Translations under genes and position numbers: made by a program | The notes under the pieces: generated by a model | The model's database searches: none | What the model was told of the DNA's origin: nothing | The model's input: the letters and a program-made list of their open reading frames with translations, nothing else | Shown here: one piece after another, positions 1 to 64,000 of the stretch | Layout of the letters: each line of letters opens with the position of its first letter | How positions within the stretch are numbered: the stretch's first letter is position 1 | From: Phallusia mammillata | Taxonomy: Eukaryota | Direction of reading: 5' to 3' | DNA: 64,000 nt | NCBI GenBank assembly: GCA_965637545.1 | Contig: OZ281495.1 | Coordinates: 7,688,001 to 7,752,000, forward strand

Positions 1-60
1 ATACTAAATTTTGGCATACTACGAAGTAAGTGTTTTGTAAATCTTCTTAAGAAAACATAC

Positions 61-470
61 CTATAGTGGAGTTGAGCGAAACAGGAAAGTTGAAAATTCG
101 ATTTACATCTGATCCAAGATCCTATATGGGAAATTACATGGGTTAGTTAGTTATGTATTATACAATCCCAACTGGCATGATTAAAATTCATTTGAAAACA
201 TTAACGAGTGGGTAGGCCTATAGTTTTTGTACTCTCAGTTAACGAATTAGTAAGATATGTCATCAACCCTTGATTACCTGCATCGATAAGGACCAAACTC
301 TTAGGTCAAGACACCTGTAAAAAGCACAGTTGCAGATTAATGCATACATTACCCAACAACACACTTTCTGCTATCTCTTACCTCTCTTTCTCTAACCGCA
401 CTGTAGGTACAGGTATAAAAATGCCCTCCTCGTTGCCACATTTTGTCCAATACGGATATAAATTCGCCAT
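61..470 (-). CDS. Exons 1-3 (470-382, 314-278, 121-61) of a copy whose remaining exons lie left of the window
   Basis: Same sequence and splice signals as exons 1-3 of copy 1, shifted by 3,323 bp. Confidence 0.8.
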
Positions 471-665
471 TTTGACAGAGCATATAAATGCACGTCTGGT
501 TTTTATTTCCATTTTCAGAAAAATACTCAAAAAGTTAAAAGTTACCATGAAACCGATTATTAGGTAGGAGGCAGTGTGACGTCACATTGCCGCATTTATG
601 ACAAATTTTGGCTGACAAATGTTTGCAAGCATCAGTTTGTTGTGTGTTAAGTACTGGCATTAGAG

Positions 666-730
666 CAGTGGTTCTTAACCTGGGAACTCCAGGGATTCGG
701 CAACGCTGATTCAGGGGTTCGACGAAGGTC
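666..730 (+). mobile_element. One end of a hAT (Charlie/Buster-like) non-autonomous element or MITE; partner TIR absent; present in every unit
   Basis: Begins CAGTGGTTCTTAACCT, resembling Charlie/Buster-type TIRs. Subterminal repeats CAGGGATTCG (690-699) and CAGGGGTTCG (712-721). The flanking 8 bp CATTAGAG fit the Buster nnnTAnnn target. No AGGTTAAGAACCACTG found in the unit. Confidence 0.65.
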
Positions 731-1118
731 CTTTGAAGTATAGAAATATTCGTTTTCGTCAAACTTTACGGATCTTTTGTCGCTTATAAGTAGCATTTTT
801 TTTGCTAAATAGAAAAACACTGTACGTTTGTAACTAGGGTTTTGTATCTTTTTTGACGGAACAAAGAACATTGTGTGAATTGTTCGTAGGCAGCAAAAAC
901 TAATTACTTCATGTTTCTATGAAGTTACTAAAAATACGGAATCAAGGCAATCCTGAAACAAGATGCTCGTATTGTGATGTCAGAACTGTGTTACCATTAA
1001 GTTTAGTGAAAAGCCGGTTATTGCGCGCATCTGCCGAGTTCCGCCGCGCGATTTCAACTTGCCATCTCTACGGACGACGAATTATGACGAGATTGGGTTC
1101 TTCCAGATTTCTATTTTC

Positions 1119-1178
1119 AGTGAAACGGGGTTTCACCGCACGGTGCTGCACCGTTTCACTTGCGCACGGCCGTCAGTG
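1119..1178. other. GC-rich cluster of nested inverted repeats and palindromes; present in every unit
   Basis: AGTGAAACGG (1119-1128) pairs with CCGTTTCACT (1151-1160). GTGAAAC-GGG-GTTTCAC at 1120-1136, ACGGTGC-T-GCACCGT at 1140-1154, TGCGCA at 1161-1166, ACGGCCGT at 1166-1173. Confidence 0.85.
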
Positions 1179-1489
1179 TAATTAATTTCCTTTTCGTTTT
1201 GTGAATTCCAAGTCTGTAAAAGACATCAACTCTTAACCTAAAATATCAACAATATCTTACGTACGTGATACCGTTAACTCTTGAGAAATAATGATTCCAC
1301 AGCACTGTTGCCAATTTATCATTTTTTAGCACTACATTTGACATGTTGTCAAGTTATTTAGCATTACAAATGACATCTAGCAACAAGAGTCAGAAGTTAT
1401 GCGAATTGGATTCGAATAAATACTGCGCATATTATGGATCTCAGTCAAATAGTAACAAGAATTTCTACAAAAAAAGCCCGAGTGTATTT

Positions 1490-1495
1490 TTTATT
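1490..1495 (-). terminator. Polyadenylation hexamer AATAAA about 200 nt after the stop codon, followed by a U/GU-rich tract; present in every unit
   Basis: The minus strand reads AATAAAAAATACACTCGGGCTTTTTTTGTAG, the canonical hexamer plus downstream-element layout. Confidence 0.65.
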
Positions 1496-1513
1496 ACGAT
1501 ACAAAGACACAGG

Positions 1514-1521
1514 ATAAAAAA
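1514..1521 (-). promoter_or_regulatory. CPE-like element UUUUUUAU in the predicted 3' UTR, 18 nt upstream of AATAAA
   Basis: Plus-strand ATAAAAAA at 1514-1521 matches UUUUUAU, but it is a short motif in AT-rich DNA. Confidence 0.35.
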
Positions 1522-1697
1522 TGATGCAAAAAGGAAAAAAAAGAGCAAAACAGCAGTGGTGAGATAGTAATACAACAAGAAAAATCATTTTTTCCTTGTT
1601 TGGAAATTGTAGTGTTTGAAAAAAATCCAGTTGAATCGGGTCAGAGCCTTCTAACTCGTCAAGGCAGCCTGTGACGAACAAGTTCCGTTGAATCCGT

Positions 1698-3793
1698 TTA
1701 CGATACACAGCAATTAATCCTAAATCGCTTTCGTTTTTTACGTTTAGGCTTTTTGCTGTCGGAAGCATCTTTCAGTGTGCCATTTTGATCTTGCTCCGGA
1801 GTAACGTCCATTGATTGAATTAGAGAATCTTTCTCGACTTTGCCTTGCGATGCCTTTTCGACATCTTTAGTAGGTTTCTCGTCTATGTGCTTATTTGCAA
1901 GGACTCTATCTTCAAGAGGAACAGTTGATTTAGGTTCTTTAGCCTGAGGTTTGGAATCTACAACTGACAGCTGTGCAATGGGCCAACTCGATTGATTCTC
2001 GTTTCCAATCTTTGGCGTTAATGTGTCTTTTTCTTTTGTCGGTTGCTTGAGAGAATTTTTAGTTTCCAATTCCACCGCAGCAGTGGGCAGTTGACCGATT
2101 GCAGAATTTTGTTTCCTCGATTGATCAGCGATTTGTAGTCTTGATCTGTCTTGACTATTTAATCTGTTTTTCCATCTATGAGGTCGTGGCATGACTGGCC
2201 GACTTACTTGGGGCGTCGCGGCAAAAACAAATACCTCAGTAGTTTGTAACTTTTGTGCAGACAACTTTCGTCTGCGTGGTTTTGGTGGTGGAGTTTGTGT
2301 GCTGGAATTCCGCACTTTGACGTTTTCTGCCAGTGGTAAGACGGAACGTGGAATATCTTGAAATCTGTTTAGGTTAAATTGTTTCGTAAACTTGACAATA
2401 GGGCGAATGTAGGTGGAAATAACAGCAGAGGGCGCCGAAGCTGTATCTTGATCACAGCGTATCGGTGGTCCTCTATGAGTTTGTCCACGTTCAGACAACT
2501 GTGGTTTGCCCCATGTCACTAAGGTTGCACCTCTTAATACATCTGGGTCAACGATTGTAGATTGGTTGTGCACAGGGCATTCTGGAACACATTGTATTTC
2601 TGTTCTCAAGCTGGTGGATGTTTTAGTCGTAGCAGCGTATGGCTTCCAGGGATCAGGCCACCTTAGAACCCTTCGATACGGTTTGCTTGGTAAGGGTATA
2701 GCAGTAACTTGAACAACTTCACTTTGTTGAAGTTTATCCCCTTGAGGCTTCAATCGCGGGGTTTGGGTAGTCGAATCCCTTACAATAACAGCTGTGAGAC
2801 CGACAATGAACTGCGTTTGATTGCTACTGAGTAAGTAATTGACCCGCGTCCATCCCGTGTCATTTGAAAGAACTGAATACATATTTTGCATCCATTCCGG
2901 TTTTACTACAGAAGATATTCGAGCTTTGAAAATTATTTTCCAAACTGCTGCAATCTCTTTCCCGTAAAGACCGGATTCGATGTGGGCTGAAAGCGGGCGA
3001 ATTGGACGCCCTGTTTGGAACAGCACTACATCTCTCGGGTGCAACTTTATATATCTTCTGTCAACCGTCTGTGTCAAGAACCAGCTTCCTTGATTATGAC
3101 TCGCTATGATGCAACCTGTTGAGAAACATTGTTTTTCGAGTTAAATTATTATAATAATCAAATATAAATATAAATGTTAGTTTAGGGATCTGCTTCTTAT
3201 TTCTGAGAATATTTTTCTAACTGTGTTGTACCTTTTATGTTTTTCTTTTCGGGAGAGGATAAAGGACTACGCCCAACTGCGTTTGTTGGATCCTCCAAAT
3301 TGGTTTCTATGTAACAAAGTGAAATACTAAATTTTGGCATACTACGAAGTAAGTGTTTTGTAAATCTTCTTAAGAAAACATACCTATAGTGGAGTTGAGC
3401 GAAACAGGAAAGTTGAAAATTCGATTTACATCTGATCCAAGATCCTATATGGGAAATTACATGGGTTAGTTAGTTATGTATTATACAATCCCAACTGGCA
3501 TGATTAAAATTCATTTGAAAACATTAACGAGTGGGTAGGCCTATAGTTTTTGTACTCTCAGTTAACGAATTAGTAAGATATGTCATCAACCCTTGATTAC
3601 CTGCATCGATAAGGACCAAACTCTTAGGTCAAGACACCTGTAAAAAGCACAGTTGCAGATTAATGCATACATTACCCAACAACACACTTTCTGCTATCTC
3701 TTACCTCTCTTTCTCTAACCGCACTGTAGGTACAGGTATAAAAATGCCCTCCTCGTTGCCACATTTTGTCCAATACGGATATAAATTCGCCAT
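1698..3793 (-). CDS. Copy 1 of a predicted 5-exon gene, 559 aa, unknown family, with C-terminal polybasic tract + CCVS. Exons: 3793-3705, 3637-3601, 3444-3384, 3306-3232, 3115-1698
   Basis: ATG in CAAAATGGCG context. Donors GAG|GTAAGA, CAG|GTAATC, TAG|GTATGT, AAG|GTACAA. Acceptors TTTTTACAG|G, TTTCCCATATAG|G, TTTGTTACATAG|A, TTTCTCAACAG|G. Phases 2/0/1/1 join without stops: 89+37+61+75+1418 = 1680 nt. The N-terminal 100 aa are MANLYPYWTKCGNEEGIFIPVPTVRLEKERCLDLRVWSLSMQDLGSDVNRIFNFPVSLNSTIETNLEDPTNAVGRSPLSSPEKKNIKGCIIASHNQGSWF, followed by the track's 459-aa ORF. This copy carries I92V (ORF numbering; C at 2804). Confidence 0.85.
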
Positions 3794-3897
3794 TTTGACA
3801 GAGCATATAAATGCACGTCTGGTTTTTATTTCCATTTTCAGAAAAATACTCAAAAAGTTAAAAGTTACCATGAAACCGATTATTAGGTAGGAGGCAG

Positions 3898-3909
3898 TGT
3901 GACGTCACA
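3898..3909. promoter_or_regulatory. Perfect 12-bp palindrome TGTGACGTCACA containing a full CRE (TGACGTCA), 105 nt upstream of the ATG; present in every unit (first at 575-586)
   Basis: Read directly from the sequence; TGACGTCA is the CREB/ATF/CREM consensus site. Confidence 0.6.
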
Positions 3910-5020
3910 TTGCCGCATTTATGACAAATTTTGGCTGACAAATGTTTGCAAGCATCAGTTTGTTGTGTGTTAAGTACTGGCATTAGAGCAGTGGTTCTTA
4001 ACCTGGGAACTCCAGGGATTCGGCAACGCTGATTCAGGGGTTCGACGAAGGTCCTTTGAAGTATAGAAATATTCGTTTTCGTCAAACTTTACGGATCTTT
4101 TGTCGCTTATAAGTAGCATTTTTTTTGCTAAATAGAAAAACACTGTACGTTTGTAACTAGGGTTTTGTATCTTTTTTGACGGAACAAAGAACATTGTGTG
4201 AATTGTTCGTAGGCAGCAAAAACTAATTACTTCATGTTTCTATGAAGTTACTAAAAATACGGAATCAAGGCAATCCTGAAACAAGATGCTCGTATTGTGA
4301 TGTCAGAACTGTGTTACCATTAAGTTTAGTGAAAAGCCGGTTATTGCGCGCATCTGCCGAGTTCCGCCGCGCGATTTCAACTTGCCATCTCTACGGACGA
4401 CGAATTATGACGAGATTGGGTTCTTCCAGATTTCTATTTTCAGTGAAACGGGGTTTCACCGCACGGTGCTGCACCGTTTCACTTGCGCACGGCCGTCAGT
4501 GTATTTAATTTCCTTTTCGTTTTGTGAATTCCAAGTCTGTAAAAGACATCAACTCTTAACCTAAAATATCAACAATATCTTGCGTACGTGATACCGTTAA
4601 CTCTTGAGAAATAATGATTCCACAGCACTGTTGCCAATTTATCATTTTTTAGCACTACATTTGACATGTTGTCAAGTTATTTAGCATTACAAATGACATC
4701 TAGCAACAAGAGTCAGAAGTTATGCGAATTGGATTCGAATAAATACTGCGCATATTATGGATCTCAGTCAAATAGTAACAAGAATTTCTACAAAAAAAGC
4801 CCGAGTGTATTTTTTATTACGATACAAAGACACAGGATAAAAAATGATGCAAAAAGGAAAAAAAAGAGCAAAACAGCAGTGGTGAGATAGTAATACAACA
4901 AGAAAAATCATTTTTTCCTTGTTTGGAAATTGTAGTGTTTGAAAAAAATCCAGTTGAATCGGGTCAGAGCCTTCTAACTCGTCAAGGCAGCCTGTGACGA
5001 ACAAGTTCCGTTGAATCCGT

Positions 5021-7116
5021 TTACGATACACAGCAATTAATCCTAAATCGCTTTCGTTTTTTACGTTTAGGCTTTTTGCTGTCGGAAGCATCTTTCAGTG
5101 TGCCATTTTGATCTTGCTCCGGAGTAACGTCCATTGATTGAATTAGAGAATCTTTCTCGACTTTGCCTTGCGATGCCTTTTCGACATCTTTAGTAGGTTT
5201 CTCGTCTATGTGCTTATTTGCAAGGACTCTATCTTCAAGAGGAACAGTTGATTTAGGTTCTTTAGCCTGAGGTTTGGAATCTACAACTGACAGCTGTGCA
5301 ATGGGCCAACTCGATTGATTCTCGTTTCCAATCTTTGGCGTTAATGTGTCTTTTTCTTTTGTCGGTTGCTTGAGAGAATTTTTAGTTTCCAATTCCACCG
5401 CAGCAGTGGGCAGTTGACCGATTGCAGAATTTTGTTTCCTCGATTGATCAGCGATTTGTAGTCTTGATCTGTCTTGACTATTTAATCTGTTTTTCCATCT
5501 ATGAGGTCGTGGCATGACTGGCCGACTTACTTGGGGCGTCGCGGCAAAAACAAATACCTCAGTAGTTTGTAACTTTTGTGCAGACAACTTTCGTCTGCGT
5601 GGTTTTGGTGGTGGAGTTTGTGTGCTGGAATTCCGCACTTTGACGTTTTCTGCCAGTGGTAAGACGGAACGTGGAATATCTTGAAATCTGTTTAGGTTAA
5701 ATTGTTTCGTAAACTTGACAATAGGGCGAATGTAGGTGGAAATAACAGCAGAGGGCGCCGAAGCTGTATCTTGATCACAGCGTATCGGTGGTCCTCTATG
5801 AGTTTGTCCACGTTCAGACAACTGTGGTTTGCCCCATGTCACTAAGGTTGCACCTCTTAATACATCTGGGTCAACGATTGTAGATTGGTTGTGCACAGGG
5901 CATTCTGGAACACATTGTATTTCTGTTCTCAAGCTGGTGGATGTTTTAGTCGTAGCAGCGTATGGCTTCCAGGGATCAGGCCACCTTAGAACCCTTCGAT
6001 ACGGTTTGCTTGGTAAGGGTATAGCAGTAACTTGAACAACTTCACTTTGTTGAAGTTTATCCCCTTGAGGCTTCAATCGCGGGGTTTGGGTAGTCGAATC
6101 CCTTACAATAACAGCTGTGAGACCGATAATGAACTGCGTTTGATTGCTACTGAGTAAGTAATTGACCCGCGTCCATCCCGTGTCATTTGAAAGAACTGAA
6201 TACATATTTTGCATCCATTCCGGTTTTACTACAGAAGATATTCGAGCTTTGAAAATTATTTTCCAAACTGCTGCAATCTCTTTCCCGTAAAGACCGGATT
6301 CGATGTGGGCTGAAAGCGGGCGAATTGGACGCCCTGTTTGGAACAGCACTACATCTCTCGGGTGCAACTTTATATATCTTCTGTCAACCGTCTGTGTCAA
6401 GAACCAGCTTCCTTGATTATGACTCGCTATGATGCAACCTGTTGAGAAACATTGTTTTTCGAGTTAAATTATTATAATAATCAAATATAAATATAAATGT
6501 TAGTTTAGGGATCTGCTTCTTATTTCTGAGAATATTTTTCTAACTGTGTTGTACCTTTTATGTTTTTCTTTTCGGGAGAGGATAAAGGACTACGCCCAAC
6601 TGCGTTTGTTGGATCCTCCAAATTGGTTTCTATGTAACAAAGTGAAATACTAAATTTTGGCATACTACGAAGTAAGTGTTTTGTAAATCTTCTTAAGAAA
6701 ACATACCTATAGTGGAGTTGAGCGAAACAGGAAAGTTGAAAATTCGATTTACATCTGATCCAAGATCCTATATGGGAAATTACATGGGTTAGTTAGTTAT
6801 GTATTATACAATCCCAACTGGCATGATTAAAATTCATTTGAAAACATTAACGAGTGGGTAGGCCTATACTTTTTGTACTCTCAGTTAACGAATTAGTAAG
6901 ATATGTCATCAACCCTTGATTACCTGCATCGATAAGGACCAAACTCTTAGGTCAAGACACCTGTAAAAAGCACAGTTGCAGATTAATGCATACATTACCC
7001 AACAACACACTTTCTGCTATCTCTTACCTCTCTTTCTCTAACCGCACTGTAGGTACAGGTATAAAAATGCCCTCCTCGTTGCCACATTTTGTCCAATACG
7101 GATATAAATTCGCCAT
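5021..7116 (-). CDS. Copy 2, intact 559-aa spliced gene
   Basis: Intact 459-aa terminal ORF at 5021-6400; upstream exons and ATG (7116) at the same unit offsets as copy 1. Confidence 0.85.
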
Positions 7117-8343
7117 TTTGACAGAGCATATAAATGCACGTCTGGTTTTTATTTCCATTTTCAGAAAAATACTCAAAAAGTTAAAAGTTACCATGAAACC
7201 GATTATTAGGTAGGAGGCAGTGTGACGTCACATTGCCGCATTTATGACAAATTTTGGCTGACAAATGTTTGCAAGCATCAGTTTGTTGTGTGTTAAGTAC
7301 TGGCATTAGAGCAGTGGTTCTTAACCTGGGAACTCCAGGGATTCGGCAACGCTGATTCAGGGGTTCGACGAAGGTCCTTTGAAGTATAGAAATATTCGTT
7401 TTCGTCAAACTTTACGGATCTTTTGTCGCTTATAAGTAGCATTTTTTTTGCTAAATAGAAAAACACTGTACGTTTGTAACTAGGGTTTTGTATCTTTTTT
7501 GACGGAACAAAGAACATTGTGTGAATTGTTCGTAGGCAGCAAAAACTAATTACTTCATGTTTCTATGAAGTTACTAAAAATACGGAATCAAGGCAATCCT
7601 GAAACAAGATGCTCGTATTGTGATGTCAGAACTGTGTTACCATTAAGTTTAGTGAAAAGCCGGTTATTGCGCGCATCTGCCGAGTTCCGCCGCGCGATTT
7701 CAACTTGCCATCTCTACGGACGACGAATTATGACGAGATTGGGTTCTTCCAGATTTCTATTTTCAGTGAAACGGGGTTTCACCGCACGGTGCTGCACCGT
7801 TTCACTTGCGCACGGCCGTCAGTGTATTTAATTTCCTTTTCGTTTTGTGAATTCCAAGTCTGTAAAAGACATCAACTCTTAACCTAAAATATCAACAATA
7901 TCTTGCGTACGTGATACCGTTAACTCTTGAGAAATAATGATTCCACAGCACTGTTGCCAATTTATCATTTTTTAGCACTACATTTGACATGTTGTCAAGT
8001 TATTTAGCATTACAAATGACATCTAGCAACAAGAGTCAGAAGTTATGCGAATTGGATTCGAATAAATACTGCGCATATTATGGATCTCAGTCAAATAGTA
8101 ACAAGAATTTCTACAAAAAAAGCCCGAGTGTATTTTTTATTACGATACAAAGACACAGGATAAAAAATGATGCAAAAAGGAAAAAAAAGAGCAAAACAGC
8201 AGTGGTGAGATAGTAATACAACAAGAAAAATCATTTTTTCCTTGTTTGGAAATTGTAGTGTTTGAAAAAAATCCAGTTGAATCGGGTCAGAGCCTTCTAA
8301 CTCGTCAAGGCAGCCTGTGACGAACAAGTTCCGTTGAATCCGT

Positions 8344-10439
8344 TTACGATACACAGCAATTAATCCTAAATCGCTTTCGTTTTTTACGTTTAGGCTTTTT
8401 GCTGTCGGAAGCATCTTTCAGTGTGCCATTTTGATCTTGCTCCGGAGTAACGTCCATTGATTGAATTAGAGAATCTTTCTCGACTTTGCCTTGCGATGCC
8501 TTTTCGACATCTTTAGTAGGTTTCTCGTCTATGTGCTTATTTGCAAGGACTCTATCTTCAAGAGGAACAGTTGATTTAGGTTCTTTAGCCTGAGGTTTGG
8601 AATCTACAACTGACAGCTGTGCAATGGGCCAACTCGATTGATTCTCGTTTCCAATCTTTGGCGTTAATGTGTCTTTTTCTTTTGTCGGTTGCTTGAGAGA
8701 ATTTTTAGTTTCCAATTCCACCGCAGCAGTGGGCAGTTGACCGATTGCAGAATTTTGTTTCCTCGATTGATCAGCGATTTGTAGTCTTGATCTGTCTTGA
8801 CTATTTAATCTGTTTTTCCATCTATGAGGTCGTGGCATGACTGGCCGACTTACTTGGGGCGTCGCGGCAAAAACAAATACCTCAGTAGTTTGTAACTTTT
8901 GTGCAGACAACTTTCGTCTGCGTGGTTTTGGTGGTGGAGTTTGTGTGCTGGAATTCCGCACTTTGACGTTTTCTGCCAGTGGTAAGACGGAACGTGGAAT
9001 ATCTTGAAATCTGTTTAGGTTAAATTGTTTCGTAAACTTGACAATAGGGCGAATGTAGGTGGAAATAACAGCAGAGGGCGCCGAAGCTGTATCTTGATCA
9101 CAGCGTATCGGTGGTCCTCTATGAGTTTGTCCACGTTCAGACAACTGTGGTTTGCCCCATGTCACTAAGGTTGCACCTCTTAATACATCTGGGTCAACGA
9201 TTGTAGATTGGTTGTGCACAGGGCATTCTGGAACACATTGTATTTCTGTTCTCAAGCTGGTGGATGTTTTAGTCGTAGCAGCGTATGGCTTCCAGGGATC
9301 AGGCCACCTTAGAACCCTTCGATACGGTTTGCTTGGTAAGGGTATAGCAGTAACTTGAACAACTTCACTTTGTTGAAGTTTATCCCCTTGAGGCTTCAAT
9401 CGCGGGGTTTGGGTAGTCGAATCCCTTACAATAACAGCTGTGAGACCGATAATGAACTGCGTTTGATTGCTACTGAGTAAGTAATTGACCCGCGTCCATC
9501 CCGTGTCATTTGAAAGAACTGAATACATATTTTGCATCCATTCCGGTTTTACTACAGAAGATATTCGAGCTTTGAAAATTATTTTCCAAACTGCTGCAAT
9601 CTCTTTCCCGTAAAGACCGGATTCGATGTGGGCTGAAAGCGGGCGAATTGGACGCCCTGTTTGGAACAGCACTACATCTCTCGGGTGCAACTTTATATAT
9701 CTTCTGTCAACCGTCTGTGTCAAGAACCAGCTTCCTTGATTATGACTCGCTATGATGCAACCTGTTGAGAAACATTGTTTTTCGAGTTAAATTATTATAA
9801 TAATCAAATATAAATATAAATGTTAGTTTAGGGATCTGCTTCTTATTTCTGAGAATATTTTTCTAACTGTGTTGTACCTTTTATGTTTTTCTTTTCGGGA
9901 GAGGATAAAGGACTACGCCCAACTGCGTTTGTTGGATCCTCCAAATTGGTTTCTATGTAACAAAGTGAAATACTAAATTTTGGCATACTACGAAGTAAGT
10001 GTTTTGTAAATCTTCTTAAGAAAACATACCTATAGTGGAGTTGAGCGAAACAGGAAAGTTGAAAATTCGATTTACATCTGATCCAAGATCCTATATGGGA
10101 AATTACATGGGTTAGTTAGTTATGTATTATACAATCCCAACTGGCATGATTAAAATTCATTTGAAAACATTAACGAGTGGGTAGGCCTATACTTTTTGTA
10201 CTCTCAGTTAACGAATTAGTAAGATATGTCATCAACCCTTGATTACCTGCATCGATAAGGACCAAACTCTTAGGTCAAGACACCTGTAAAAAGCACAGTT
10301 GCAGATTAATGCATACATTACCCAACAACACACTTTCTGCTATCTCTTACCTCTCTTTCTCTAACCGCACTGTAGGTACAGGTATAAAAATGCCCTCCTC
10401 GTTGCCACATTTTGTCCAATACGGATATAAATTCGCCAT
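8344..10439 (-). CDS. Copy 3, intact 559-aa spliced gene
   Basis: Intact terminal ORF at 8344-9723; conserved exon offsets. Confidence 0.85.
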
Positions 10440-11665
10440 TTTGACAGAGCATATAAATGCACGTCTGGTTTTTATTTCCATTTTCAGAAAAATACTCAAA
10501 AAGTTAAAAGTTACCATGAAACCGATTATTAGGTAGGAGGCAGTGTGACGTCACATTGCCGCATTTATGACAAATTTTGGCTGACAAATGTTTGCAAGCA
10601 TCAGTTTGTTGTGTGTTAAGTACTGGCATTAGAGCAGTGGTTCTTAACCTGGGAACTCCAGGGATTCGGCAACGCTGATTCAGGGGTTCGACGAAGGTCC
10701 TTTGAAGTATAGAAATATTCGTTTTCGTCAAACTTTACGGATCTTTTGTCGCTTATAAGTAGCATTTTTTTTGCTAAATAGAAAAACACTGTACGTTTGT
10801 AACTAGGGTTTTGTATCTTTTTTGACGGAACAAAGAACATTGTGTGAATTGTTCGTAGGCAGCAAAAACTAATTACTTCATGTTTCTATGAAGTTACTAA
10901 AAATACGGAATCAAGGCAATCCTGAAACAAGATGCTCGTATTGTGATGTCAGAACTGTGTTACCATTAAGTTTAGTGAAAAGCCGGTTATTGCGCGCATC
11001 TGCCGAGTTCCGCCGCGCGATTTCAACTTGCCATCTCTACGGACGACGAATTATGACGAGATTGGGTTCTTCCAGATTTCTATTTTCAGTGAAACGGGGT
11101 TTCACCGCACGGTGCTGCACCGTTTCACTTGCGCACGGCCGTCAGTGTATTTAATTTCCTTTTCGTTTTGTGAATTCCAAGTCTGTAAAAGACATCAACT
11201 CTTAACCTAAAATATCAACAATATCTTGCGTACGTGATACCGTTAACTCTTGAGAAATAATGATTCCACAGCACTGTTGCCAATTTATCATTTTTTAGCA
11301 CTACATTTGACATGTTGTCAAGTTATTTAGCATTACAAATGACATCTAGCAACAAGAGTCAGAAGTTATGCGAATTGGATTCGAATAAATACTGCGCATA
11401 TTATGGATCTCAGTCAAATAGTAACAAGAATTTCTACAAAAAAAGCCCGAGTGTATTTTTTATTACGATACAAAGACACAGGATAAAAAATGATGCAAAA
11501 AGGAAAAAAAAGAGCAAAACAGCAGTGGTGAGATAGTAATACAACAAGAAAAATCATTTTTTCCTTGTTTGGAAATTGTAGTGTTTGAAAAAAATCCAGT
11601 TGAATCGGGTCAGAGCCTTCTAACTCGTCAAGGCAGCCTGTGACGAACAAGTTCCGTTGAATCGT

Positions 11666-13761
11666 TTACGATACACAGCAATTAATCCTAAATCGCTTTC
11701 GTTTTTTACGTTTAGGCTTTTTGCTGTCGGAAGCATCTTTCAGTGTGCCATTTTGATCTTGCTCCGGAGTAACGTCCATTGATTGAATTAGAGAATCTTT
11801 CTCGACTTTGCCTTGCGATGCCTTTTCGACATCTTTAGTAGGTTTCTCGTCTATGTGCTTATTTGCAAGGACTCTATCTTCAAGAGGAACAGTTGATTTA
11901 GGTTCTTTAGCCTGAGGTTTGGAATCTACAACTGACAGCTGTGCAATGGGCCAACTCGATTGATTCTCGTTTCCAATCTTTGGCGTTAATGTGTCTTTTT
12001 CTTTTGTCGGTTGCTTGAGAGAATTTTTAGTTTCCAATTCCACCGCAGCAGTGGGCAGTTGACCGATTGCAGAATTTTGTTTCCTCGATTGATCAGCGAT
12101 TTGTAGTCTTGATCTGTCTTGACTATTTAATCTGTTTTTCCATCTATGAGGTCGTGGCATGACTGGCCGACTTACTTGGGGCGTCGCGGCAAAAACAAAT
12201 ACCTCAGTAGTTTGTAACTTTTGTGCAGACAACTTTCGTCTGCGTGGTTTTGGTGGTGGAGTTTGTGTGCTGGAATTCCGCACTTTGACGTTTTCTGCCA
12301 GTGGTAAGACGGAACGTGGAATATCTTGAAATCTGTTTAGGTTAAATTGTTTCGTAAACTTGACAATAGGGCGAATGTAGGTGGAAATAACAGCAGAGGG
12401 CGCCGAAGCTGTATCTTGATCACAGCGTATCGGTGGTCCTCTATGAGTTTGTCCACGTTCAGACAACTGTGGTTTGCCCCATGTCACTAAGGTTGCACCT
12501 CTTAATACATCTGGGTCAACGATTGTAGATTGGTTGTGCACAGGGCATTCTGGAACACATTGTATTTCTGTTCTCAAGCTGGTGGATGTTTTAGTCGTAG
12601 CAGCGTATGGCTTCCAGGGATCAGGCCACCTTAGAACCCTTCGATACGGTTTGCTTGGTAAGGGTATAGCAGTAACTTGAACAACTTCACTTTGTTGAAG
12701 TTTATCCCCTTGAGGCTTCAATCGCGGGGTTTGGGTAGTCGAATCCCTTACAATAACAGCTGTGAGACCGATAATGAACTGCGTTTGATTGCTACTGAGT
12801 AAGTAATTGACCCGCGTCCATCCCGTGTCATTTGAAAGAACTGAATACATATTTTGCATCCATTCCGGTTTTACTACAGAAGATATTCGAGCTTTGAAAA
12901 TTATTTTCCAAACTGCTGCAATCTCTTTCCCGTAAAGACCGGATTCGATGTGGGCTGAAAGCGGGCGAATTGGACGCCCTGTTTGGAACAGCACTACATC
13001 TCTCGGGTGCAACTTTATATATCTTCTGTCAACCGTCTGTGTCAAGAACCAGCTTCCTTGATTATGACTCGCTATGATGCAACCTGTTGAGAAACATTGT
13101 TTTTCGAGTTAAATTATTATAATAATCAAATATAAATATAAATGTTAGTTTAGGGATCTGCTTCTTATTTCTGAGAATATTTTTCTAACTGTGTTGTACC
13201 TTTTATGTTTTTCTTTTCGGGAGAGGATAAAGGACTACGCCCAACTGCGTTTGTTGGATCCTCCAAATTGGTTTCTATGTAACAAAGTGAAATACTAAAT
13301 TTTGGCATACTACGAAGTAAGTGTTTTGTAAATCTTCTTAAGAAAACATACCTATAGTGGAGTTGAGCGAAACAGGAAAGTTGAAAATTCGATTTACATC
13401 TGATCCAAGATCCTATATGGGAAATTACATGGGTTAGTTAGTTATGTATTATACAATCCCAACTGGCATGATTAAAATTCATTTGAAAACATTAACGAGT
13501 GGGTAGGCCTATAGTTTTTGTACTCTCAGTTAACGAATTAGTAAGATATGTCATCAACCCTTGATTACCTGCATCGATAAGGACCAAACTCTTAGGTCAA
13601 GACACCTGTAAAAAGCACAGTTGCAGATTAATGCATACATTACCCAACAACACACTTTCTGCTATCTCTTACCTCTCTTTCTCTAACCGCACTGTAGGTA
13701 CAGGTATAAAAATGCCCTCCTCGTTGCCACATTTTGTCCAATACGGATATAAATTCGCCAT
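11666..13761 (-). CDS. Copy 4, intact 559-aa spliced gene
   Basis: Intact terminal ORF at 11666-13045; the 1-bp deletion near 11663 lies just past the stop codon. Confidence 0.85.
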
Positions 13762-14987
13762 TTTGACAGAGCATATAAATGCACGTCTGGTTTTTATTTC
13801 CATTTTCAGAAAAATACTCAAAAAGTTAAAAGTTACCATGAAACCGATTATTAGGTAGGAGGCAGTGTGACGTCACATTGCCGCATTTATGACAAATTTT
13901 GGCTGACAAATGTTTGCAAGCATCAGTTTGTTGTGTGTTAAGTACTGGCATTAGAGCAGTGGTTCTTAACCTGGGAACTCCAGGGATTCGGCAACGCTGA
14001 TTCAGGGGTTCGACGAAGGTCCTTTGAAGTATAGAAATATTCGTTTTCGTCAAACTTTACGGATCTTTTGTCGCTTATAAGTAGCATTTTTTTTGCTAAA
14101 TAGAAAAACACTGTACGTTTGTAACTAGGGTTTTGTATCGTTTTTGACGGAACAAAGAACATTGTGTGAATTGTTCGTAGGCAGCAAAAACTAATTACTT
14201 CATGTTTCTATGAAGTTACTAAAAATACGGAATCAAGGCAATCCTGAAACAAGATGCTCGTATTGTGATGTCAGAACTGTGTTACCATTAAGTTTAGTGA
14301 AAAGCCGGTTATTGCGCGCATCTGCCGAGTTCCGCCGCGCGATTTCAACTTGCCATCTCTACGGACGACGAATTATGACGAGATTGGGTTCTTCCAGATT
14401 TCTATTTTCAGTGAAACGGGGTTTCACCGCACGGTGCTGCACCGTTTCACTTGCGCACGGCCGTCAGTGTATTTAATTTCCTTTTCGTTTTGTGAATTCC
14501 AAGTCTGTAAAAGACATCAACTCTTAACCTAAAATATCAACAATATCTTGCGTACGTGATACCGTTAACTCTTGAGAAATAATGATTCCACAGCACTGTT
14601 GCCAATTTATCATTTTTTAGCACTACATTTGACATGTTGTCAAGTTATTTAGCATTACAAATGACATCTAGCAACAAGAGTCAGAAGTTATGCGAATTGG
14701 ATTCGAATAAATACTGCGCATATTATGGATCTCAGTCAAATAGTAACAAGAATTTCTACAAAAAAAGCCCGAGTGTATTTTTTATTACGATACAAAGACA
14801 CAGGATAAAAAATGATGCAAAAAGGAAAAAAAAGAGCAAAACAGCAGTGGTGAGATAGTAATACAACAAGAAAAATCATTTTTCCTTGTTTGGAAATTGT
14901 AGTGTTTGAAAAAAATCCAGTTGAATCGGGTCAGAGCCTTCTAACTCGTCAAGGCAGCCTGTGACGAACAAGTTCCGTTGAATCCGT

Positions 14988-17084
14988 TTACGATACACAG
15001 CAATTAATCCTAAATCGCTTTCGTTTTTTACGTTTAGGCTTTTTGCTGTCGGAAGCATCTTTCAGTGTGCCATTTTGATCTTGCTCCGGAGTAACGTCCA
15101 TTGATTGAATTAGAGAATCTTTCTCGACTTTGCCTTGCGATGCCTTTTCGACATCTTTAGTAGGTTTCTCGTCTATGTGCTTATTTGCAAGGACTCTATC
15201 TTCAAGAGGAACAGTTGATTTAGGTTCTTTAGCCTGAGGTTTGGAATCTACAACTGACAGCTGTGCAATGGGCCAACTCGATTGATTCTCGTTTCCAATC
15301 TTTGGCGTTAATGTGTCTTTTTCTTTTGTCGGTTGCTTGAGAGAATTTTTAGTTTCCAATTCCACCGCAGCAGTGGGCAGTTGACCGATTGCAGAATTTT
15401 GTTTCCTCGATTGATCAGCGATTTGTAGTCTTGATCTGTCTTGACTATTTAATCTGTTTTTCCATCTATGAGGTCGTGGCATGACTGGCCGACTTACTTG
15501 GGGCGTCGCGGCAAAAACAAATACCTCAGTAGTTTGTAACTTTTGTGCAGACAACTTTCGTCTGCGTGGTTTTGGTGGTGGAGTTTGTGTGCTGGAATTC
15601 CGCACTTTGACGTTTTCTGCCAGTGGTAAGACGGAACGTGGAATATCTTGAAATCTGTTTAGGTTAAATTGTTTCGTAAACTTGACAATAGGGCGAATGT
15701 AGGTGGAAATAACAGCAGAGGGCGCCGAAGCTGTATCTTGATCACAGCGTATCGGTGGTCCTCTATGAGTTTGTCCCACGTTCAGACAACTGTGGTTTGC
15801 CCCATGTCACTAAGGTTGCACCTCTTAATACATCTGGGTCAACGATTGTAGATTGGTTGTGCACAGGGCATTCTGGAACACATTGTATTTCTGTTCTCAA
15901 GCTGGTGGATGTTTTAGTCGTAGCAGCGTATGGCTTCCAGGGATCAGGCCACCTTAGAACCCTTCGATACGGTTTGCTTGGTAAGGGTATAGCAGTAACT
16001 TGAACAACTTCACTTTGTTGAAGTTTATCCCCTTGAGGCTTCAATCGCGGGGTTTGGGTAGTCGAATCCCTTACAATAACAGCTGTGAGACCGATAATGA
16101 ACTGCGTTTGATTGCTACTGAGTAAGTAATTGACCCGCGTCCATCCCGTGTCATTTGAAAGAACTGAATACATATTTTGCATCCATTCCGGTTTTACTAC
16201 AGAAGATATTCGAGCTTTGAAAATTATTTTCCAAACTGCTGCAATCTCTTTCCCGTAAAGACCGGATTCGATGTGGGCTGAAAGCGGGCGAATTGGACGC
16301 CCTGTTTGGAACAGCACTACATCTCTCGGGTGCAACTTTATATATCTTCTGTCAACCGTCTGTGTCAAGAACCAGCTTCCTTGATTATGACTCGCTATGA
16401 TGCAACCTGTTGAGAAACATTGTTTTTCGAGTTAAATTATTATAATAATCAAATATAAATATAAATGTTAGTTTAGGGATCTGCTTCTTATTTCTGAGAA
16501 TATTTTTCTAACTGTGTTGTACCTTTTATGTTTTTCTTTTCGGGAGAGGATAAAGGACTACGCCCAACTGCGTTTGTTGGATCCTCCAAATTGGTTTCTA
16601 TGTAACAAAGTGAAATACTAAATTTTGGCATACTACGAAGTAAGTGTTTTGTAAATCTTCTTAAGAAAACATACCTATAGTGGAGTTGAGCGAAACAGGA
16701 AAGTTGAAAATTCGATTTACATCTGATCCAAGATCCTATATGGGAAATTACATGGGTTAGTTAGTTATGTATTATACAATCCCAACTGGCATGATTAAAA
16801 TTCATTTGAAAACATTAACGAGTGGGTAGGCCTATACTTTTTGTACTCTCAGTTAACGAATTAGTAAGATATGTCATCAACCCTTGATTACCTGCATCGA
16901 TAAGGACCAAACTCTTAGGTCAAGACACCTGTAAAAAGCACAGTTGCAGATTAATGCATACATTACCCAACAACACACTTTCTGCTATCTCTTACCTCTC
17001 TTTCTCTAACCGCACTGTAGGTACAGGTATAAAAATGCCCTCCTCGTTGCCACATTTTGTCCAATACGGATATAAATTCGCCAT
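14988..17084 (-). pseudogene. Copy 5, frameshifted by one extra C at 15775-15777 (real mutation or consensus error)
   Basis: GTCCCACG instead of GTCCACG; the ORF track splits into 201-aa and 263-aa pieces. Confidence 0.5.
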
Positions 17085-18311
17085 TTTGACAGAGCATATA
17101 AATGCACGTCTGGTTTTTATTTCCATTTTCAGAAAAATACTCAAAAAGTTAAAAGTTACCATGAAACCGATTATTAGGTAGGAGGCAGTGTGACGTCACA
17201 TTGCCGCATTTATGACAAATTTTGGCTGACAAATGTTTGCAAGCATCAGTTTGTTGTGTGTTAAGTACTGGCATTAGAGCAGTGGTTCTTAACCTGGGAA
17301 CTCCAGGGATTCGGCAACGCTGATTCAGGGGTTCGACGAAGGTCCTTTGAAGTATAGAAATATTCGTTTTCGTCAAACTTTACGGATCTTTTGTCGCTTA
17401 TAAGTAGCATTTTTTTTGCTAAATAGAAAAACACTGTACGTTTGTAACTAGGGTTTTGTATCTTTTTTGACGGAACAAAGAACATTGTGTGAATTGTTCG
17501 TAGGCAGCAAAAACTAATTACTTCATGTTTCTATGAAGTTACTAAAAATACGGAATCAAGGCAATCCTGAAACAAGATGCTCGTATTGTGATGTCAGAAC
17601 TGTGTTACCATTAAGTTTAGTGAAAAGCCGGTTATTGCGCGCATCTGCCGAGTTCCGCCGCGCGATTTCAACTTGCCATCTCTACGGACGACGAATTATG
17701 ACGAGATTGGGTTCTTCCAGATTTCTATTTTCAGTGAAACGGGGTTTCACCGCACGGTGCTGCACCGTTTCACTTGCGCACGGCCGTCAGTGTATTTAAT
17801 TTCCTTTTCGTTTTGTGAATTCCAAGTCTGTAAAAGACATCAACTCTTAACCTAAAATATCAACAATATCTTGCGTACGTGATACCGTTAACTCTTGAGA
17901 AATAATGATTCCACAGCACTGTTGCCAATTTATCATTTTTTAGCACTACATTTGACATGTTGTCAAGTTATTTAGCATTACAAATGACATCTAGCAACAA
18001 GAGTCAGAAGTTATGCGAATTGGATTCGAATAAATACTGCGCATATTATGGATCTCAGTCAAATAGTAACAAGAATTTCTACAAAAAAAGCCCGAGTGTA
18101 TTTTTTATTACGATACAAAGACACAGGATAAAAAATGATGCAAAAAGGAAAAAAAAGAGCAAAACAGCAGTGGTGAGATAGTAATACAACAAGAAAAATC
18201 ATTTTTTCCTTGTTTGGAAATTGTAGTGTTTGAAAAAAATCCAGTTGAATCGGGTCAGAGCCTTCTAACTCGTCAAGGCAGCCTGTGACGAACAAGTTCC
18301 GTTGAATCCGT

Positions 18312-20407
18312 TTACGATACACAGCAATTAATCCTAAATCGCTTTCGTTTTTTACGTTTAGGCTTTTTGCTGTCGGAAGCATCTTTCAGTGTGCCATTTT
18401 GATCTTGCTCCGGAGTAACGTCCATTGATTGAATTAGAGAATCTTTCTCGACTTTGCCTTGCGATGCCTTTTCGACATCTTTAGTAGGTTTCTCGTCTAT
18501 GTGCTTATTTGCAAGGACTCTATCTTCAAGAGGAACAGTTGATTTAGGTTCTTTAGCCTGAGGTTTGGAATCTACAACTGACAGCTGTGCAATGGGCCAA
18601 CTCGATTGATTCTCGTTTCCAATCTTTGGCGTTAATGTGTCTTTTTCTTTTGTCGGTTGCTTGAGAGAATTTTTAGTTTCCAATTCCACCGCAGCAGTGG
18701 GCAGTTGACCGATTGCAGAATTTTGTTTCCTCGATTGATCAGCGATTTGTAGTCTTGATCTGTCTTGACTATTTAATCTGTTTTTCCATCTATGAGGTCG
18801 TGGCATGACTGGCCGACTTACTTGGGGCGTCGCGGCAAAAACAAATACCTCAGTAGTTTGTAACTTTTGTGCAGACAACTTTCGTCTGCGTGGTTTTGGT
18901 GGTGGAGTTTGTGTGCTGGAATTCCGCACTTTGACGTTTTCTGCCAGTGGTAAGACGGAACGTGGAATATCTTGAAATCTGTTTAGGTTAAATTGTTTCG
19001 TAAACTTGACAATAGGGCGAATGTAGGTGGAAATAACAGCAGAGGGCGCCGAAGCTGTATCTTGATCACAGCGTATCGGTGGTCCTCTATGAGTTTGTCC
19101 ACGTTCAGACAACTGTGGTTTGCCCCATGTCACTAAGGTTGCACCTCTTAATACATCTGGGTCAACGATTGTAGATTGGTTGTGCACAGGGCATTCTGGA
19201 ACACATTGTATTTCTGTTCTCAAGCTGGTGGATGTTTTAGTCGTAGCAGCGTATGGCTTCCAGGGATCAGGCCACCTTAGAACCCTTCGATACGGTTTGC
19301 TTGGTAAGGGTATAGCAGTAACTTGAACAACTTCACTTTGTTGAAGTTTATCCCCTTGAGGCTTCAATCGCGGGGTTTGGGTAGTCGAATCCCTTACAAT
19401 AACAGCTGTGAGACCGATAATGAACTGCGTTTGATTGCTACTGAGTAAGTAATTGACCCGCGTCCATCCCGTGTCATTTGAAAGAACTGAATACATATTT
19501 TGCATCCATTCCGGTTTTACTACAGAAGATATTCGAGCTTTGAAAATTATTTTCCAAACTGCTGCAATCTCTTTCCCGTAAAGACCGGATTCGATGTGGG
19601 CTGAAAGCGGGCGAATTGGACGCCCTGTTTGGAACAGCACTACATCTCTCGGGTGCAACTTTATATATCTTCTGTCAACCGTCTGTGTCAAGAACCAGCT
19701 TCCTTGATTATGACTCGCTATGATGCAACCTGTTGAGAAACATTGTTTTTCGAGTTAAATTATTATAATAATCAAATATAAATATAAATGTTAGTTTAGG
19801 GATCTGCTTCTTATTTCTGAGAATATTTTTCTAACTGTGTTGTACCTTTTATGTTTTTCTTTTCGGGAGAGGATAAAGGACTACGCCCAACTGCGTTTGT
19901 TGGATCCTCCAAATTGGTTTCTATGTAACAAAGTGAAATACTAAATTTTGGCATACTACGAAGTAAGTGTTTTGTAAATCTTCTTAAGAAAACATACCTA
20001 TAGTGGAGTTGAGCGAAACAGGAAAGTTGAAAATTCGATTTACATCTGATCCAAGATCCTATATGGGAAATTACATGGGTTAGTTAGTTATGTATTATAC
20101 AATCCCAACTGGCATGATTAAAATTCATTTGAAAACATTAACGAGTGGGTAGGCCTATAGTTTTTGTACTCTCAGTTAACGAATTAGTAAGATATGTCAT
20201 CAACCCTTGATTACCTGCATCGATAAGGACCAAACTCTTAGGTCAAGACACCTGTAAAAAGCACAGTTGCAGATTAATGCATACATTACCCAACAACACA
20301 CTTTCTGCTATCTCTTACCTCTCTTTCTCTAACCGCACTGTAGGTACAGGTATAAAAATGCCCTCCTCGTTGCCACATTTTGTCCAATACGGATATAAAT
20401 TCGCCAT
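18312..20407 (-). CDS. Copy 6, intact 559-aa spliced gene
   Basis: Intact terminal ORF at 18312-19691; conserved exon offsets. Confidence 0.85.
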
Positions 20408-21634
20408 TTTGACAGAGCATATAAATGCACGTCTGGTTTTTATTTCCATTTTCAGAAAAATACTCAAAAAGTTAAAAGTTACCATGAAACCGATTATTAG
20501 GTAGGAGGCAGTGTGACGTCACATTGCCGCATTTATGACAAATTTTGGCTGACAAATGTTTGCAAGCATCAGTTTGTTGTGTGTTAAGTACTGGCATTAG
20601 AGCAGTGGTTCTTAACCTGGGAACTCCAGGGATTCGGCAACGCTGATTCAGGGGTTCGACGAAGGTCCTTTGAAGTATAGAAATATTCGTTTTCGTCAAA
20701 CTTTACGGATCTTTTGTCGCTTATAAGTAGCATTTTTTTTGCTAAATAGAAAAACACTGTACGTTTGTAACTAGGGTTTTGTATCTTTTTTGACGGAACA
20801 AAGAACATTGTGTGAATTGTTCGTAGGCAGCAAAAACTAATTACTTCATGTTTCTATGAAGTTACTAAAAATACGGAATCAAGGCAATCCTGAAACAAGA
20901 TGCTCGTATTGTGATGTCAGAACTGTGTTACCATTAAGTTTAGTGAAAAGCCGGTTATTGCGCGCATCTGCCGAGTTCCGCCGCGCGATTTCAACTTGCC
21001 ATCTCTACGGACGACGAATTATGACGAGATTGGGTTCTTCCAGATTTCTATTTTCAGTGAAACGGGGTTTCACCGCACGGTGCTGCACCGTTTCACTTGC
21101 GCACGGCCGTCAGTGTATTTAATTTCCTTTTCGTTTTGTGAATTCCAAGTCTGTAAAAGACATCAACTCTTAACCTAAAATATCAACAATATCTTGCGTA
21201 CGTGATACCGTTAACTCTTGAGAAATAATGATTCCACAGCACTGTTGCCAATTTATCATTTTTTAGCACTACATTTGACATGTTGTCAAGTTATTTAGCA
21301 TTACAAATGACATCTAGCAACAAGAGTCAGAAGTTATGCGAATTGGATTCGAATAAATACTGCGCATATTATGGATCTCAGTCAAATAGTAACAAGAATT
21401 TCTACAAAAAAAGCCCGAGTGTATTTTTTATTACGATACAAAGACACAGGATAAAAAATGATGCAAAAAGGAAAAAAAAGAGCAAAACAGCAGTGGTGAG
21501 ATAGTAATACAACAAGAAAAATCATTTTTTCCTTGTTTGGAAATTGTAGTGTTTGAAAAAAATCCAGTTGAATCGGGTCAGAGCCTTCTAACTCGTCAAG
21601 GCAGCCTGTGACGAACAAGTTCCGTTGAATCCGT

Positions 21635-63951: not shown

Positions 63952-64000
63952 CTGTAAAAAGCACAGTTACAGATTAATGCATCATTAACCAGCAACACAC

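What the first reader, a model, noticed from the sequence alone, without database searches (positions are those of the whole stretch)
1698..3793. A 5-exon gene in every repeat unit: the 459-aa ORF is only part of the last exon of a 559-aa orphan protein
Seen: the track ORF starts at TTG (3075-3077) and its frame stays open up to a strong acceptor at 3116. Four upstream exons (89, 37, 61 and 75 nt) have GT-AG ends, branch-like CTAAC/TTAAC motifs and phases that all close in frame back to an ATG in AAAATGG context. In the 37-nt exon only one of three frames is open, and it is the one required. Inference: this is a real, expressed gene. I recognise no known domain in it.
Basis: partly seen in the sequence, partly recalled or inferred. 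Interest (0 to 1): 0.9.

Follow-up and report, generated by a model that had tools for sequence, protein, structure and literature searches.

The report
Tandemly amplified orphan five-exon gene
A probable sea-squirt genome carries dozens of near-identical head-to-tail 3.3-kb units, each holding what looks on sequence evidence like a real spliced gene for a basic 63-kDa protein with no detectable relatives, but no RNA data show that it is expressed.

Summary
The window is 19 head-to-tail units of about 3323 bp, 99.3-99.9% identical.

It is more than chance:
- No dinucleotide shuffle (0 of 300) gave four introns or a comparable extension.
- GC content alternates between exons and introns.
- The four small exons carry 0 of 262 variant sites among units; the introns carry 11 of 416.
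- An old internal duplication of about 50 aa keeps codon positions 1 and 2 while position 3 is saturated. That is the mark of long purifying selection in this frame.

Caveats:
- Only 15 of 19 copies of the long ORF are intact.
- Three in-frame ATGs are possible starts.
- The 75-nt exon 4 can be skipped without breaking the frame, and it has the weakest splice sites.

Expression is not shown. All runs that hold the unit look like DNA, and the likely RNA runs of the species lack it. No homologue, domain or confident fold was found.

Best reading: a lineage-specific gene amplified in tandem, like coding macrosatellites or ampliconic genes. Its product may be membrane-anchored through a polybasic tract and a C-terminal CCVS. 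The scan had already noted that tail and the duplication on this same DNA.

The parts
1..64000 (-). Head-to-tail array of 19 units of about 3323 bp, all with the gene on the minus strand. It includes an assembly gap (N 32763-32962) and a 3-unit higher-order repeat in its right third.
   Evidence: Anchor spacing is 3322-3325 bp, with two exceptions of 3357 and 3786. Units differ by 1-23 substitutions. Units 14 and 17, and units 15 and 18, share variants.
1698..3115 (-). Exon 5 (1418 nt, stop codon at 1698-1700). It holds the 459-aa ORF.
   Evidence: Acceptor score is at the 97th percentile. Only 3 substitutions among 18 units.
3232..3306 (-). Exon 4 (75 nt, a multiple of three). This is the least certain exon and may be a cassette.
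   Evidence: It has the weakest donor and acceptor, and a model without it scores equally. GC is 0.41 against 0.25 in the flanking introns, p=0.012. It has the best coding score of the small exons.
3384..3444 (-). Exon 3 (61 nt)
3601..3637 (-). Exon 2 (37 nt). Only the required frame is open.
   Evidence: It has the best acceptor in the unit.
3705..3793 (-). The frame stays open upstream to further ATGs at 3836 and 3871.
   Evidence: It has the best donor in the unit.
1490..1495 (-). AATAAA poly(A) signal, 203 nt after the stop codon
1698..1754 (-). C-terminal tail of the protein: a polybasic tract (KKPKRKKRKRFR) followed by INCCVS and the stop. This is a CaaX-like prenylation signal.
Evidence: Translation.
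2628..2789 (-). Copy A (residues 197-250) of an old internal module of about 50 aa that begins V.VR.S.TQTP
2166..2321 (-). Copy B (residues 353-404) of the same module
3893..3914 (.). 22-nt near-palindrome centred on TGACGTCA (a CRE/ATF-type site), about 105 nt upstream of the ATG at 3793. Candidate promoter element.
   Evidence: inverted repeat I5

Best explanation
Each 3.3-kb unit carries a genuine spliced protein-coding gene of four or five exons, about 534-585 aa depending on the start codon and on whether exon 4 is used. The gene belongs to a lineage-specific family and has been amplified into a head-to-tail array of at least several dozen near-identical copies. That makes it a coding macrosatellite, or ampliconic gene.

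Shown here:
- The array and its near-identity.
- The closed exon model.
- Past purifying selection on the protein.
- Lower variability in exons than in introns.

Inferred, not shown:
- The array serves high dosage, or is a selfishly expanded gene, expressed in a narrow stage or tissue such as germ line or early embryo. This would explain its absence from the available transcriptome-like runs.
- The product is basic (pI 9.9) and largely disordered.
- It is farnesylated at CCVS and held on the inner face of a membrane or the nuclear envelope by the neighbouring polybasic tract.
- Its three TQT motifs could recruit LC8-type dimerisers.
For: Array: 19 units of about 3323 bp at 99.3-99.9% identity. 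Main-unit contig depth is about 4300 (X1) and 14000 (X3). Deletion-variant units sit at about 90-120 and 280-410, so there are at least about 45 copies per rarest assembled variant.

Coding:
- A 459-codon open frame at 40% GC cannot arise by chance.
- Residues 197-250 and 353-404 align with score 77, against 35 +/- 5.6 for shuffles.
- Over the 46 aligned codons, identity at positions 1, 2 and 3 is 28, 31 and 14. Of 23 identical residues, only 5 use the same codon.

Exon model:
- It closes in frame.
- Donors 1-3 and acceptor 1 are top-ranked in the unit.
- 0 of 300 shuffles match it.
- GC is 0.38-0.46 in exons and 0.24-0.37 in introns, alternating without exception, p=0.003.
- The codon score is best in the required frame.
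- Variant sites: all exons 3/1680 against non-exon 27/1643, p=3e-6. Small exons 0/262 against introns 11/416, p=0.009.
- AATAAA lies 203 nt after the stop.

Protein features: a polybasic tract plus CCVS directly before the stop.
Against: - No RNA evidence. There are no spliced joints, and the likely RNA runs of the species lack the unit.
- No protein from it, whole or in fragments, is in a 15-billion-protein collection.
- Exon variants are 4 nonsynonymous to 1 synonymous. Frameshifts occur in 3 of 19 units. So recent selection on single copies is weak or absent.
- The near-identity of units means intact ORFs alone prove nothing.
- AlphaFold gave no confident fold (pLDDT 34 and 30).
- The language-model 'recognition' value is low.
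- Farnesylation, LC8 binding and the expression pattern are untested inferences.
Confidence: 0.55

Rival explanations
1. Silent relic. A once-functional gene was caught in a recent segmental amplification. The array is now an untranscribed, possibly heterochromatic macrosatellite, and its ORFs are intact only because the copies are too young to have decayed.
For: - Units are 99.3-99.9% identical, so little decay is expected.
- 3 of 19 units are already frameshifted, and deletion variants that remove part of exon 1 exist.
- Exon variants are 4 nonsynonymous to 1 synonymous.
- Likely RNA runs of the species hold none of it.
Against: - Exons are about ten times less variable than introns and spacer among units, including the most diverged unit (1 against 22 substitutions, p=2e-6).
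- Splice sites and small exons are identical in all copies.
- CpG observed/expected is about 0.9-1.15, so there is no mark of long germ-line methylation.
Confidence: 0.27
2. The gene is real but built differently. Exon 4 may be skipped or not be an exon. Translation may start at 3836 or 3871. There may be further non-coding 5' exons or SL trans-splicing. An internal intron (donor at 2207, acceptor at 1670) may give a short isoform.
For: - Exon 4 is a multiple of three with the weakest sites, and the four-exon model scores as well.
- There are three in-frame ATGs.
- The second-best donor (2207) and second-best acceptor (1670) of the unit lie in and just after exon 5. Joined, they would give ...ATPQ-AALTS-stop.
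Against: - Exon 4 has exon-like GC and the best coding score of the small exons.
- The frame stays open through 2207-1698 and ends in a targeting motif.
Confidence: 0.35
3. The ORF comes from a transposable element or a virus that became tandemly arrayed.
For: The spacer holds a piece of a dispersed repeat at about 3960-4070, with many loose ends and diverged contigs. Tandem arrays built from elements are known in human DNA (PMC2588610).
Against: - No Pfam, viral-contig or protein-library match of any kind.
- The gene has four short spliceosomal introns.
- No terminal repeats flank the ORF.
Confidence: 0.04
4. A chance ORF in a non-coding satellite.
For: No homologues and no predicted fold.
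Against: - 459 stop-free codons at 40% GC have a probability near 1e-12.
- The codon-position pattern of the internal duplication argues against chance.
- So does the shuffle test.
Confidence: 0.01

Closest known systems
Coding macrosatellites of human DNA (D4Z4 with DUX4, RS447 with USP17, the CT47 array)
   Same: A kilobase-scale unit (D4Z4 is also 3.3 kb, from my own knowledge) repeated head to tail at very high identity, with each unit carrying a complete ORF. Copy variants and broken units are mixed in. Such arrays are surveyed in PMC2588610, whose reference list names D4Z4, CT47 and RS447.
   Different: Here each unit carries a spliced multi-exon gene. DUX4 and USP17 are intronless retrogene-like ORFs with known domains, whereas this protein has no known domain. 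Expression and copy-number polymorphism are unknown.
Ampliconic germ-line gene arrays (Drosophila Stellate/Su(Ste), mammalian TSPY, Sly/Slx). From my own knowledge.
   Same: Dozens to hundreds of near-identical tandem gene copies homogenised by unequal exchange or conversion. Expression is narrow, so they are easily missed in ordinary transcriptomes.
   Different: Those families derive from recognisable parent genes (CK2 beta, SET/NAP) and sit on sex chromosomes. Ascidians are hermaphrodites, and no parent gene was found here.
Polybasic-CaaX membrane anchors (K-Ras4B KKKKKKSKTKCVIM; PRL phosphatases ending CCIQ/CCVQ/CCVM). From my own knowledge.
   Same: A run of Lys/Arg directly before a C-terminal Cys-x-aliphatic-x box. 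CCVS has the same CC-V-x form as PRL-2.
   Different: There is no GTPase or phosphatase domain ahead of it. Prenylation was not tested.
Drosophila Kugelkern (a farnesylated, NLS-bearing, largely disordered lineage-specific nuclear-envelope protein of about 570 aa). From my own knowledge.
   Same: Similar size, basic and disordered character, an NLS-like tract plus a CaaX end, and no relatives outside its lineage.
   Different: There is no sequence similarity, Kugelkern is a single-copy gene, and the localisation of this protein is unknown.

Membership tests
Coding macrosatellite / ampliconic gene array | Kilobase-scale unit repeated head to tail at high identity | tested here: met
   19 units of about 3323 bp at 99.3-99.9% identity. 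A head-to-tail joint is also seen in independent read sets.
Coding macrosatellite / ampliconic gene array | Each unit holds a complete gene or ORF | tested here: met
   15 of 19 long ORFs are intact. The small exons and splice sites are identical in all copies.
Coding macrosatellite / ampliconic gene array | The unit is transcribed, typically in germ line or early embryo | tested here: inconclusive
   No RNA run holds it. The holders look like DNA. The tissues and stages of the RNA-like runs are unknown.
Coding macrosatellite / ampliconic gene array | Copy number varies between individuals | not tested
   The depth ratios give a lower bound of about 45 copies, not variation between individuals.
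CaaX-prenylated polybasic proteins | Cys at position -4 with an aliphatic a2 residue and a farnesyl-type X (S, M, Q or A) | tested here: met
   The protein ends ...INCCVS then stop.
CaaX-prenylated polybasic proteins | Polybasic tract within about 15 residues of the CaaX box | tested here: met
   KKPKRKKRKRFR lies immediately upstream.
CaaX-prenylated polybasic proteins | The protein is actually prenylated and bound to membrane | not testable with these tools
   Needs a cell or enzyme assay.
LC8/DYNLL-binding TQT proteins | TQT anchor motifs in a disordered context | tested here: met
   LTQTV, TTQTP and STQTP are present. Two of them are conserved between the two copies of the duplicated module. 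About 0.2 TQT motifs would be expected by composition (my estimate).
LC8/DYNLL-binding TQT proteins | Binding to LC8 | not testable with these tools
   Needs a pull-down or ITC experiment.
Any curated protein family (Pfam) or solved structure | Significant profile or sequence match | tested here: not met
   Pfam gave 0 families at E up to 10. PDB gave 0. The 1.84-billion representative library gave 0.
Transposable-element or viral gene | Match to element or virus proteins, terminal repeats, and dispersed copies of the ORF | tested here: not met
   No viral-contig relative. No repeats flank the ORF. The only dispersed piece lies in the spacer.

The most novel reading that the evidence does not exclude
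The array encodes a previously unseen, ascidian-restricted family of farnesylated, LC8-recruiting scaffold proteins. They would be made in bulk in germ cells or cleavage-stage embryos, at the plasma membrane or nuclear envelope. The amplification would reflect either a burst-dosage need, as with early histone or Dux-type arrays, or an intragenomic conflict of the Stellate type in a hermaphrodite that has no sex chromosomes.
Probability: 0.12. Interest if true: 0.7.

Novelty: new member of a known kind. Interest (0 to 1): 0.45.

Why it matters
If it is expressed, this would be an unannotated, very high-copy chordate gene with no relatives among 15 billion predicted proteins. Gene annotation tends to mask such cases as repeats.

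It would give a tractable model, in an invertebrate chordate, for three questions: how coding macrosatellites arise, how selection acts on a gene present in dozens of identical copies, and what a polybasic-CaaX orphan protein does.

If it is silent, it is an ordinary young macrosatellite that happens to preserve a gene.

Tried and rejected
Searches that found nothing:
- Rfam, at gathering thresholds and at E up to 1, and tRNA scans of the unit.
- Pfam at E up to 10.
- The word-indexed protein search.
- Exhaustive phmmer against 1.84 billion representatives.
- PDB sequences.
- ESM Atlas by features, for residues 1-200 and for the whole protein.
- Viral and JGI metagenome contig scans.

Structure: AlphaFold2 without an alignment gave pLDDT 34 for the 471-aa piece and 30 for the first 141 aa. 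I therefore ran no fold search, because matches to such models are meaningless.

Reads: the one run search and the one read-laying run gave only DNA-like holders.

Repeats and small RNAs:
- Tandem Repeats Finder cannot see a 3.3-kb period. I defined the units by anchor spacing instead.
- The 78-codon spacing hinted at by DNA repeat D1 is not a third protein module.
- The 20-nt match between exon 4 and exon 5 (D2) lies in different reading frames and is chance.
- Hairpins in the spacer do not fold better than shuffles (z -1.3 to -2.0).

Literature: searches for ascidian macrosatellites, ampliconic genes or tunicate orphan arrays found no description of this locus.

Not done:
- The spliced 559-aa protein could not be handed to the search tools, because it has no single reference. 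Only the exon-5 piece (471 aa) was searched.

Full report
**What is there.** The whole 64-kb window is one head-to-tail array. A 30-nt anchor at the stop codon recurs 19 times, at spacings of 3322-3325 bp. The exceptions are one unit with a 34-bp insertion (3357 bp) and one that spans the assembly gap N 32763-32962 (3786 bp). Aligned units differ from unit 1 by only 1-23 substitutions. The right third of the window shows a three-unit higher-order repeat: units 14 and 17 share variants, and so do units 15 and 18. Notes from other windows of this genome call it a probable sea squirt. I did not test that.

**The observation.**
- The ORF 1698-3077 (minus strand, TTG start) is 459 aa.
- Its frame is open upstream to 3140, so the acceptor at 3117-3116 lies inside the open stretch.
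- The five exons have GT..AG borders and join into 1680 nt, giving 559 aa, from an ATG in AAAATGG.
- Only the required frame of the 37-nt exon is open. Branch-like motifs lie 21-25 nt before three of the four acceptors.

**Is it more than chance?** Short open exons and GT/AG pairs are easy to find, so I tested this in five ways.
1. I used rough metazoan splice-site weight matrices written from memory. Donors 1-3 are three of the four best GT sites on the gene strand of the whole unit, and acceptor 1 is the best AG. Donor 4 and acceptors 2 and 3 are weaker, at the 84th-90th percentile.
2. I set thresholds at the weakest observed sites. Then 0 of 300 dinucleotide-preserving shuffles of the upstream 760 nt gave any path into the ORF with four introns or 95 or more added codons, and 2.7% gave 60 or more codons. 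The thresholds were chosen after seeing the data, which favours the model somewhat.
3. GC content alternates without exception: exons 0.43, 0.46, 0.38, 0.41, 0.44 and introns 0.37, 0.33, 0.27, 0.24 (p=0.003).
4. A codon model trained on exon 5 scores the joined small exons best in the required frame. It scores all intron frames negative.
5. Among 18 aligned units, the four small exons carry 0 variant sites in 262 bp, while the introns between them carry 11 substitutions in 416 bp (p=0.009). All exons together carry 3 in 1680 bp, against 27 in 1643 bp of intron and spacer (p=3e-6).

**Is the long frame a protein?** A 459-codon open frame at 40% GC is not a chance event. A stronger argument comes from inside the protein. 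Residues 197-250 and 353-404 are two copies of one module (V.VR.S.TQTP..KP...KLQ..EV...P..WK). They align with score 77, against 35 +/- 5.6 for shuffles. Over the 46 aligned codons, the copies agree at 28, 31 and 14 of first, second and third positions. Of the 23 identical residues, only 5 use the same codon. Third positions are saturated while the amino acids are kept, so this frame was under purifying selection for a long time. An AATAAA lies 203 nt after the stop. The protein ends in KKPKRKKRKRFRINCCVS, a polybasic tract plus a CaaX-type box placed exactly at the C-terminus. That is unlikely in a meaningless frame.

**What weakens it.**
- Four of 19 long ORFs are broken. Unit 5 has +G at 2487, units 14 and 17 have +A at 2045, and unit 10 holds the gap.
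- The few exon variants are 4 nonsynonymous to 1 synonymous. Frameshifts are not clearly rarer than substitutions. So selection on single copies is weak, as expected when dozens of copies exist.
- Because units are so alike, intact ORFs alone say nothing.
- The model is not unique. ATGs at 3836 and 3871 are in frame.
- Exon 4 is a multiple of three with the weakest sites, so a four-exon version is equally good by site scores. However, exon 4 has exon-like GC (p=0.012) and the best coding score of the small exons.
- The second-best donor (2207) and second-best acceptor (1670) of the unit could define a short isoform.

**Expression.**
- No run on record as RNA holds the unit.
- The three holders cover exons, introns and spacer evenly. 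They contain the head-to-tail joint and show no joint at any proposed intron, which is DNA behaviour.
- Twelve small runs of the same species label, guessed to be RNA, hold next to none of its words. The one I laid (X4) touched only a 40-nt piece of a dispersed repeat in the spacer (4015-4057).
- This is mild evidence against broad, strong expression. It does not exclude stage- or tissue-restricted expression.
- Contig depth of the main unit is about 4300 in X1 and about 14000 in X3. Deletion-variant units sit at about 90-120 and 280-410, giving at least about 45 copies per rarest assembled variant.
- A run labelled as another organism holds the same consensus at depth about 9. I read that as probable carry-over between samples, not as presence in a second species.

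**Relatives and fold.** Nothing was found. Pfam, the word-indexed search, exhaustive phmmer over 1.84 billion representatives of about 15 billion proteins, PDB, the ESM Atlas, and viral and metagenome contigs all returned no match. Not even a fragment of this protein is in those collections, so it is unannotated. AlphaFold2 without an alignment gave pLDDT 34 and 30, so fold searches would have been meaningless.

**The protein by composition.** It is 63 kDa with pI 9.9 and rich in S, P, K, T, R and Q. The first 200 residues or so are mixed and hydrophobic. The C-terminal half is strongly polar. There is no signal peptide or membrane helix.

**How it most likely works.**
- Shown: a spliced gene structure, old protein-level constraint, and a young homogenised array.
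- Inferred: the array is a coding macrosatellite or ampliconic gene. Either it supplies a large dose of product in a narrow window, or it has expanded selfishly.
- Inferred: the product is a basic, mostly disordered scaffold. It would be tethered to the cytoplasmic face of a membrane or to the nuclear envelope by farnesyl and polybasic charge, as in K-Ras4B or the PRL phosphatases (my own knowledge).
- Inferred: the three TQT motifs are possible LC8 sites, two of them conserved between the module copies.
- A near-perfect 22-nt palindrome around TGACGTCA lies about 105 nt before the ATG and is a candidate CREB/ATF-type promoter element.
- CpG is not depleted, with observed/expected 0.9-1.15. 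This argues against long-term germ-line methylation of the unit.

**Comparison and novelty.** In kind it matches human coding macrosatellites (D4Z4/DUX4, RS447/USP17, CT47; PMC2588610) and ampliconic germ-line genes. It differs in carrying a multi-exon gene and a protein with no known family. Literature searches found no description of such an array in tunicates. I file it as a new member of a known kind. Interest is moderate: the structure is well supported, but expression and function are open.

Noticed in passing
window 41636-61611 (units 13-18): A three-unit higher-order repeat of about 10 kb. Units 14 and 17 share the +A frameshift at 2045. Units 15 and 18 share N424H and four intron variants. 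All of units 13-18 share the variant at 4582.
   Followed up: partly
window 32659-33446, around N 32763-32962: Unit 10 is cut by a 200-N assembly gap and has about 263 extra bases that duplicate part of exon 5. The array is therefore not fully assembled and is probably longer than shown. The gap was left untouched.
   Followed up: no
window about 3960-4070: A piece of a dispersed repeat containing CAGTGGTTCTTAACC lies in the spacer. Many contigs of runs X1 and X3 match it at 90-95% and then run on into unlike sequence. It is the only part of the unit seen in the RNA-like run X4.
   Followed up: partly
window 3893-3914: A 22-nt near-perfect palindrome centred on the CRE/ATF octamer TGACGTCA, about 105 nt upstream of the ATG at 3793 and identical in all units.
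   Followed up: no
window 4270-4520: A CpG-rich patch (21 CpG in 250 bp, GC 0.47) with a 20+20-nt hairpin at 4442-4483. It has no Rfam match and folds no better than shuffles (z -1.3 and -2.0). It may be a promoter or a 5' non-coding exon.
   Followed up: partly
window 3665-3764, 4222-4269 and 4572-4620 / 1300-1352: Read sets X1 and X3 hold minor unit variants with deletions of 100, 48-49 and about 80-100 bp, at about 2% of the main depth. The first removes the 3' part of exon 1 and its donor.
   Followed up: no
window 1300-4600, run X2: A large 2024 run labelled as a different organism holds the identical unit consensus at depth of only about 9. This looks like carry-over of a very high-copy repeat between samples, not a second host species.
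   Followed up: no
window 2207 and 1670: The second-best donor (CAAGTAAGT) lies inside exon 5, and the second-best acceptor lies 28 nt after the stop. Joining them would give a short isoform ending ...ATPQAALTS that lacks the polybasic-CaaX tail.
   Followed up: partly
window 1445-1768 and its copies: The 107-aa ATG ORF that overlaps the stop codon region in every unit runs through the 3' UTR and the poly(A) signal. It is most likely spurious.
   Followed up: no
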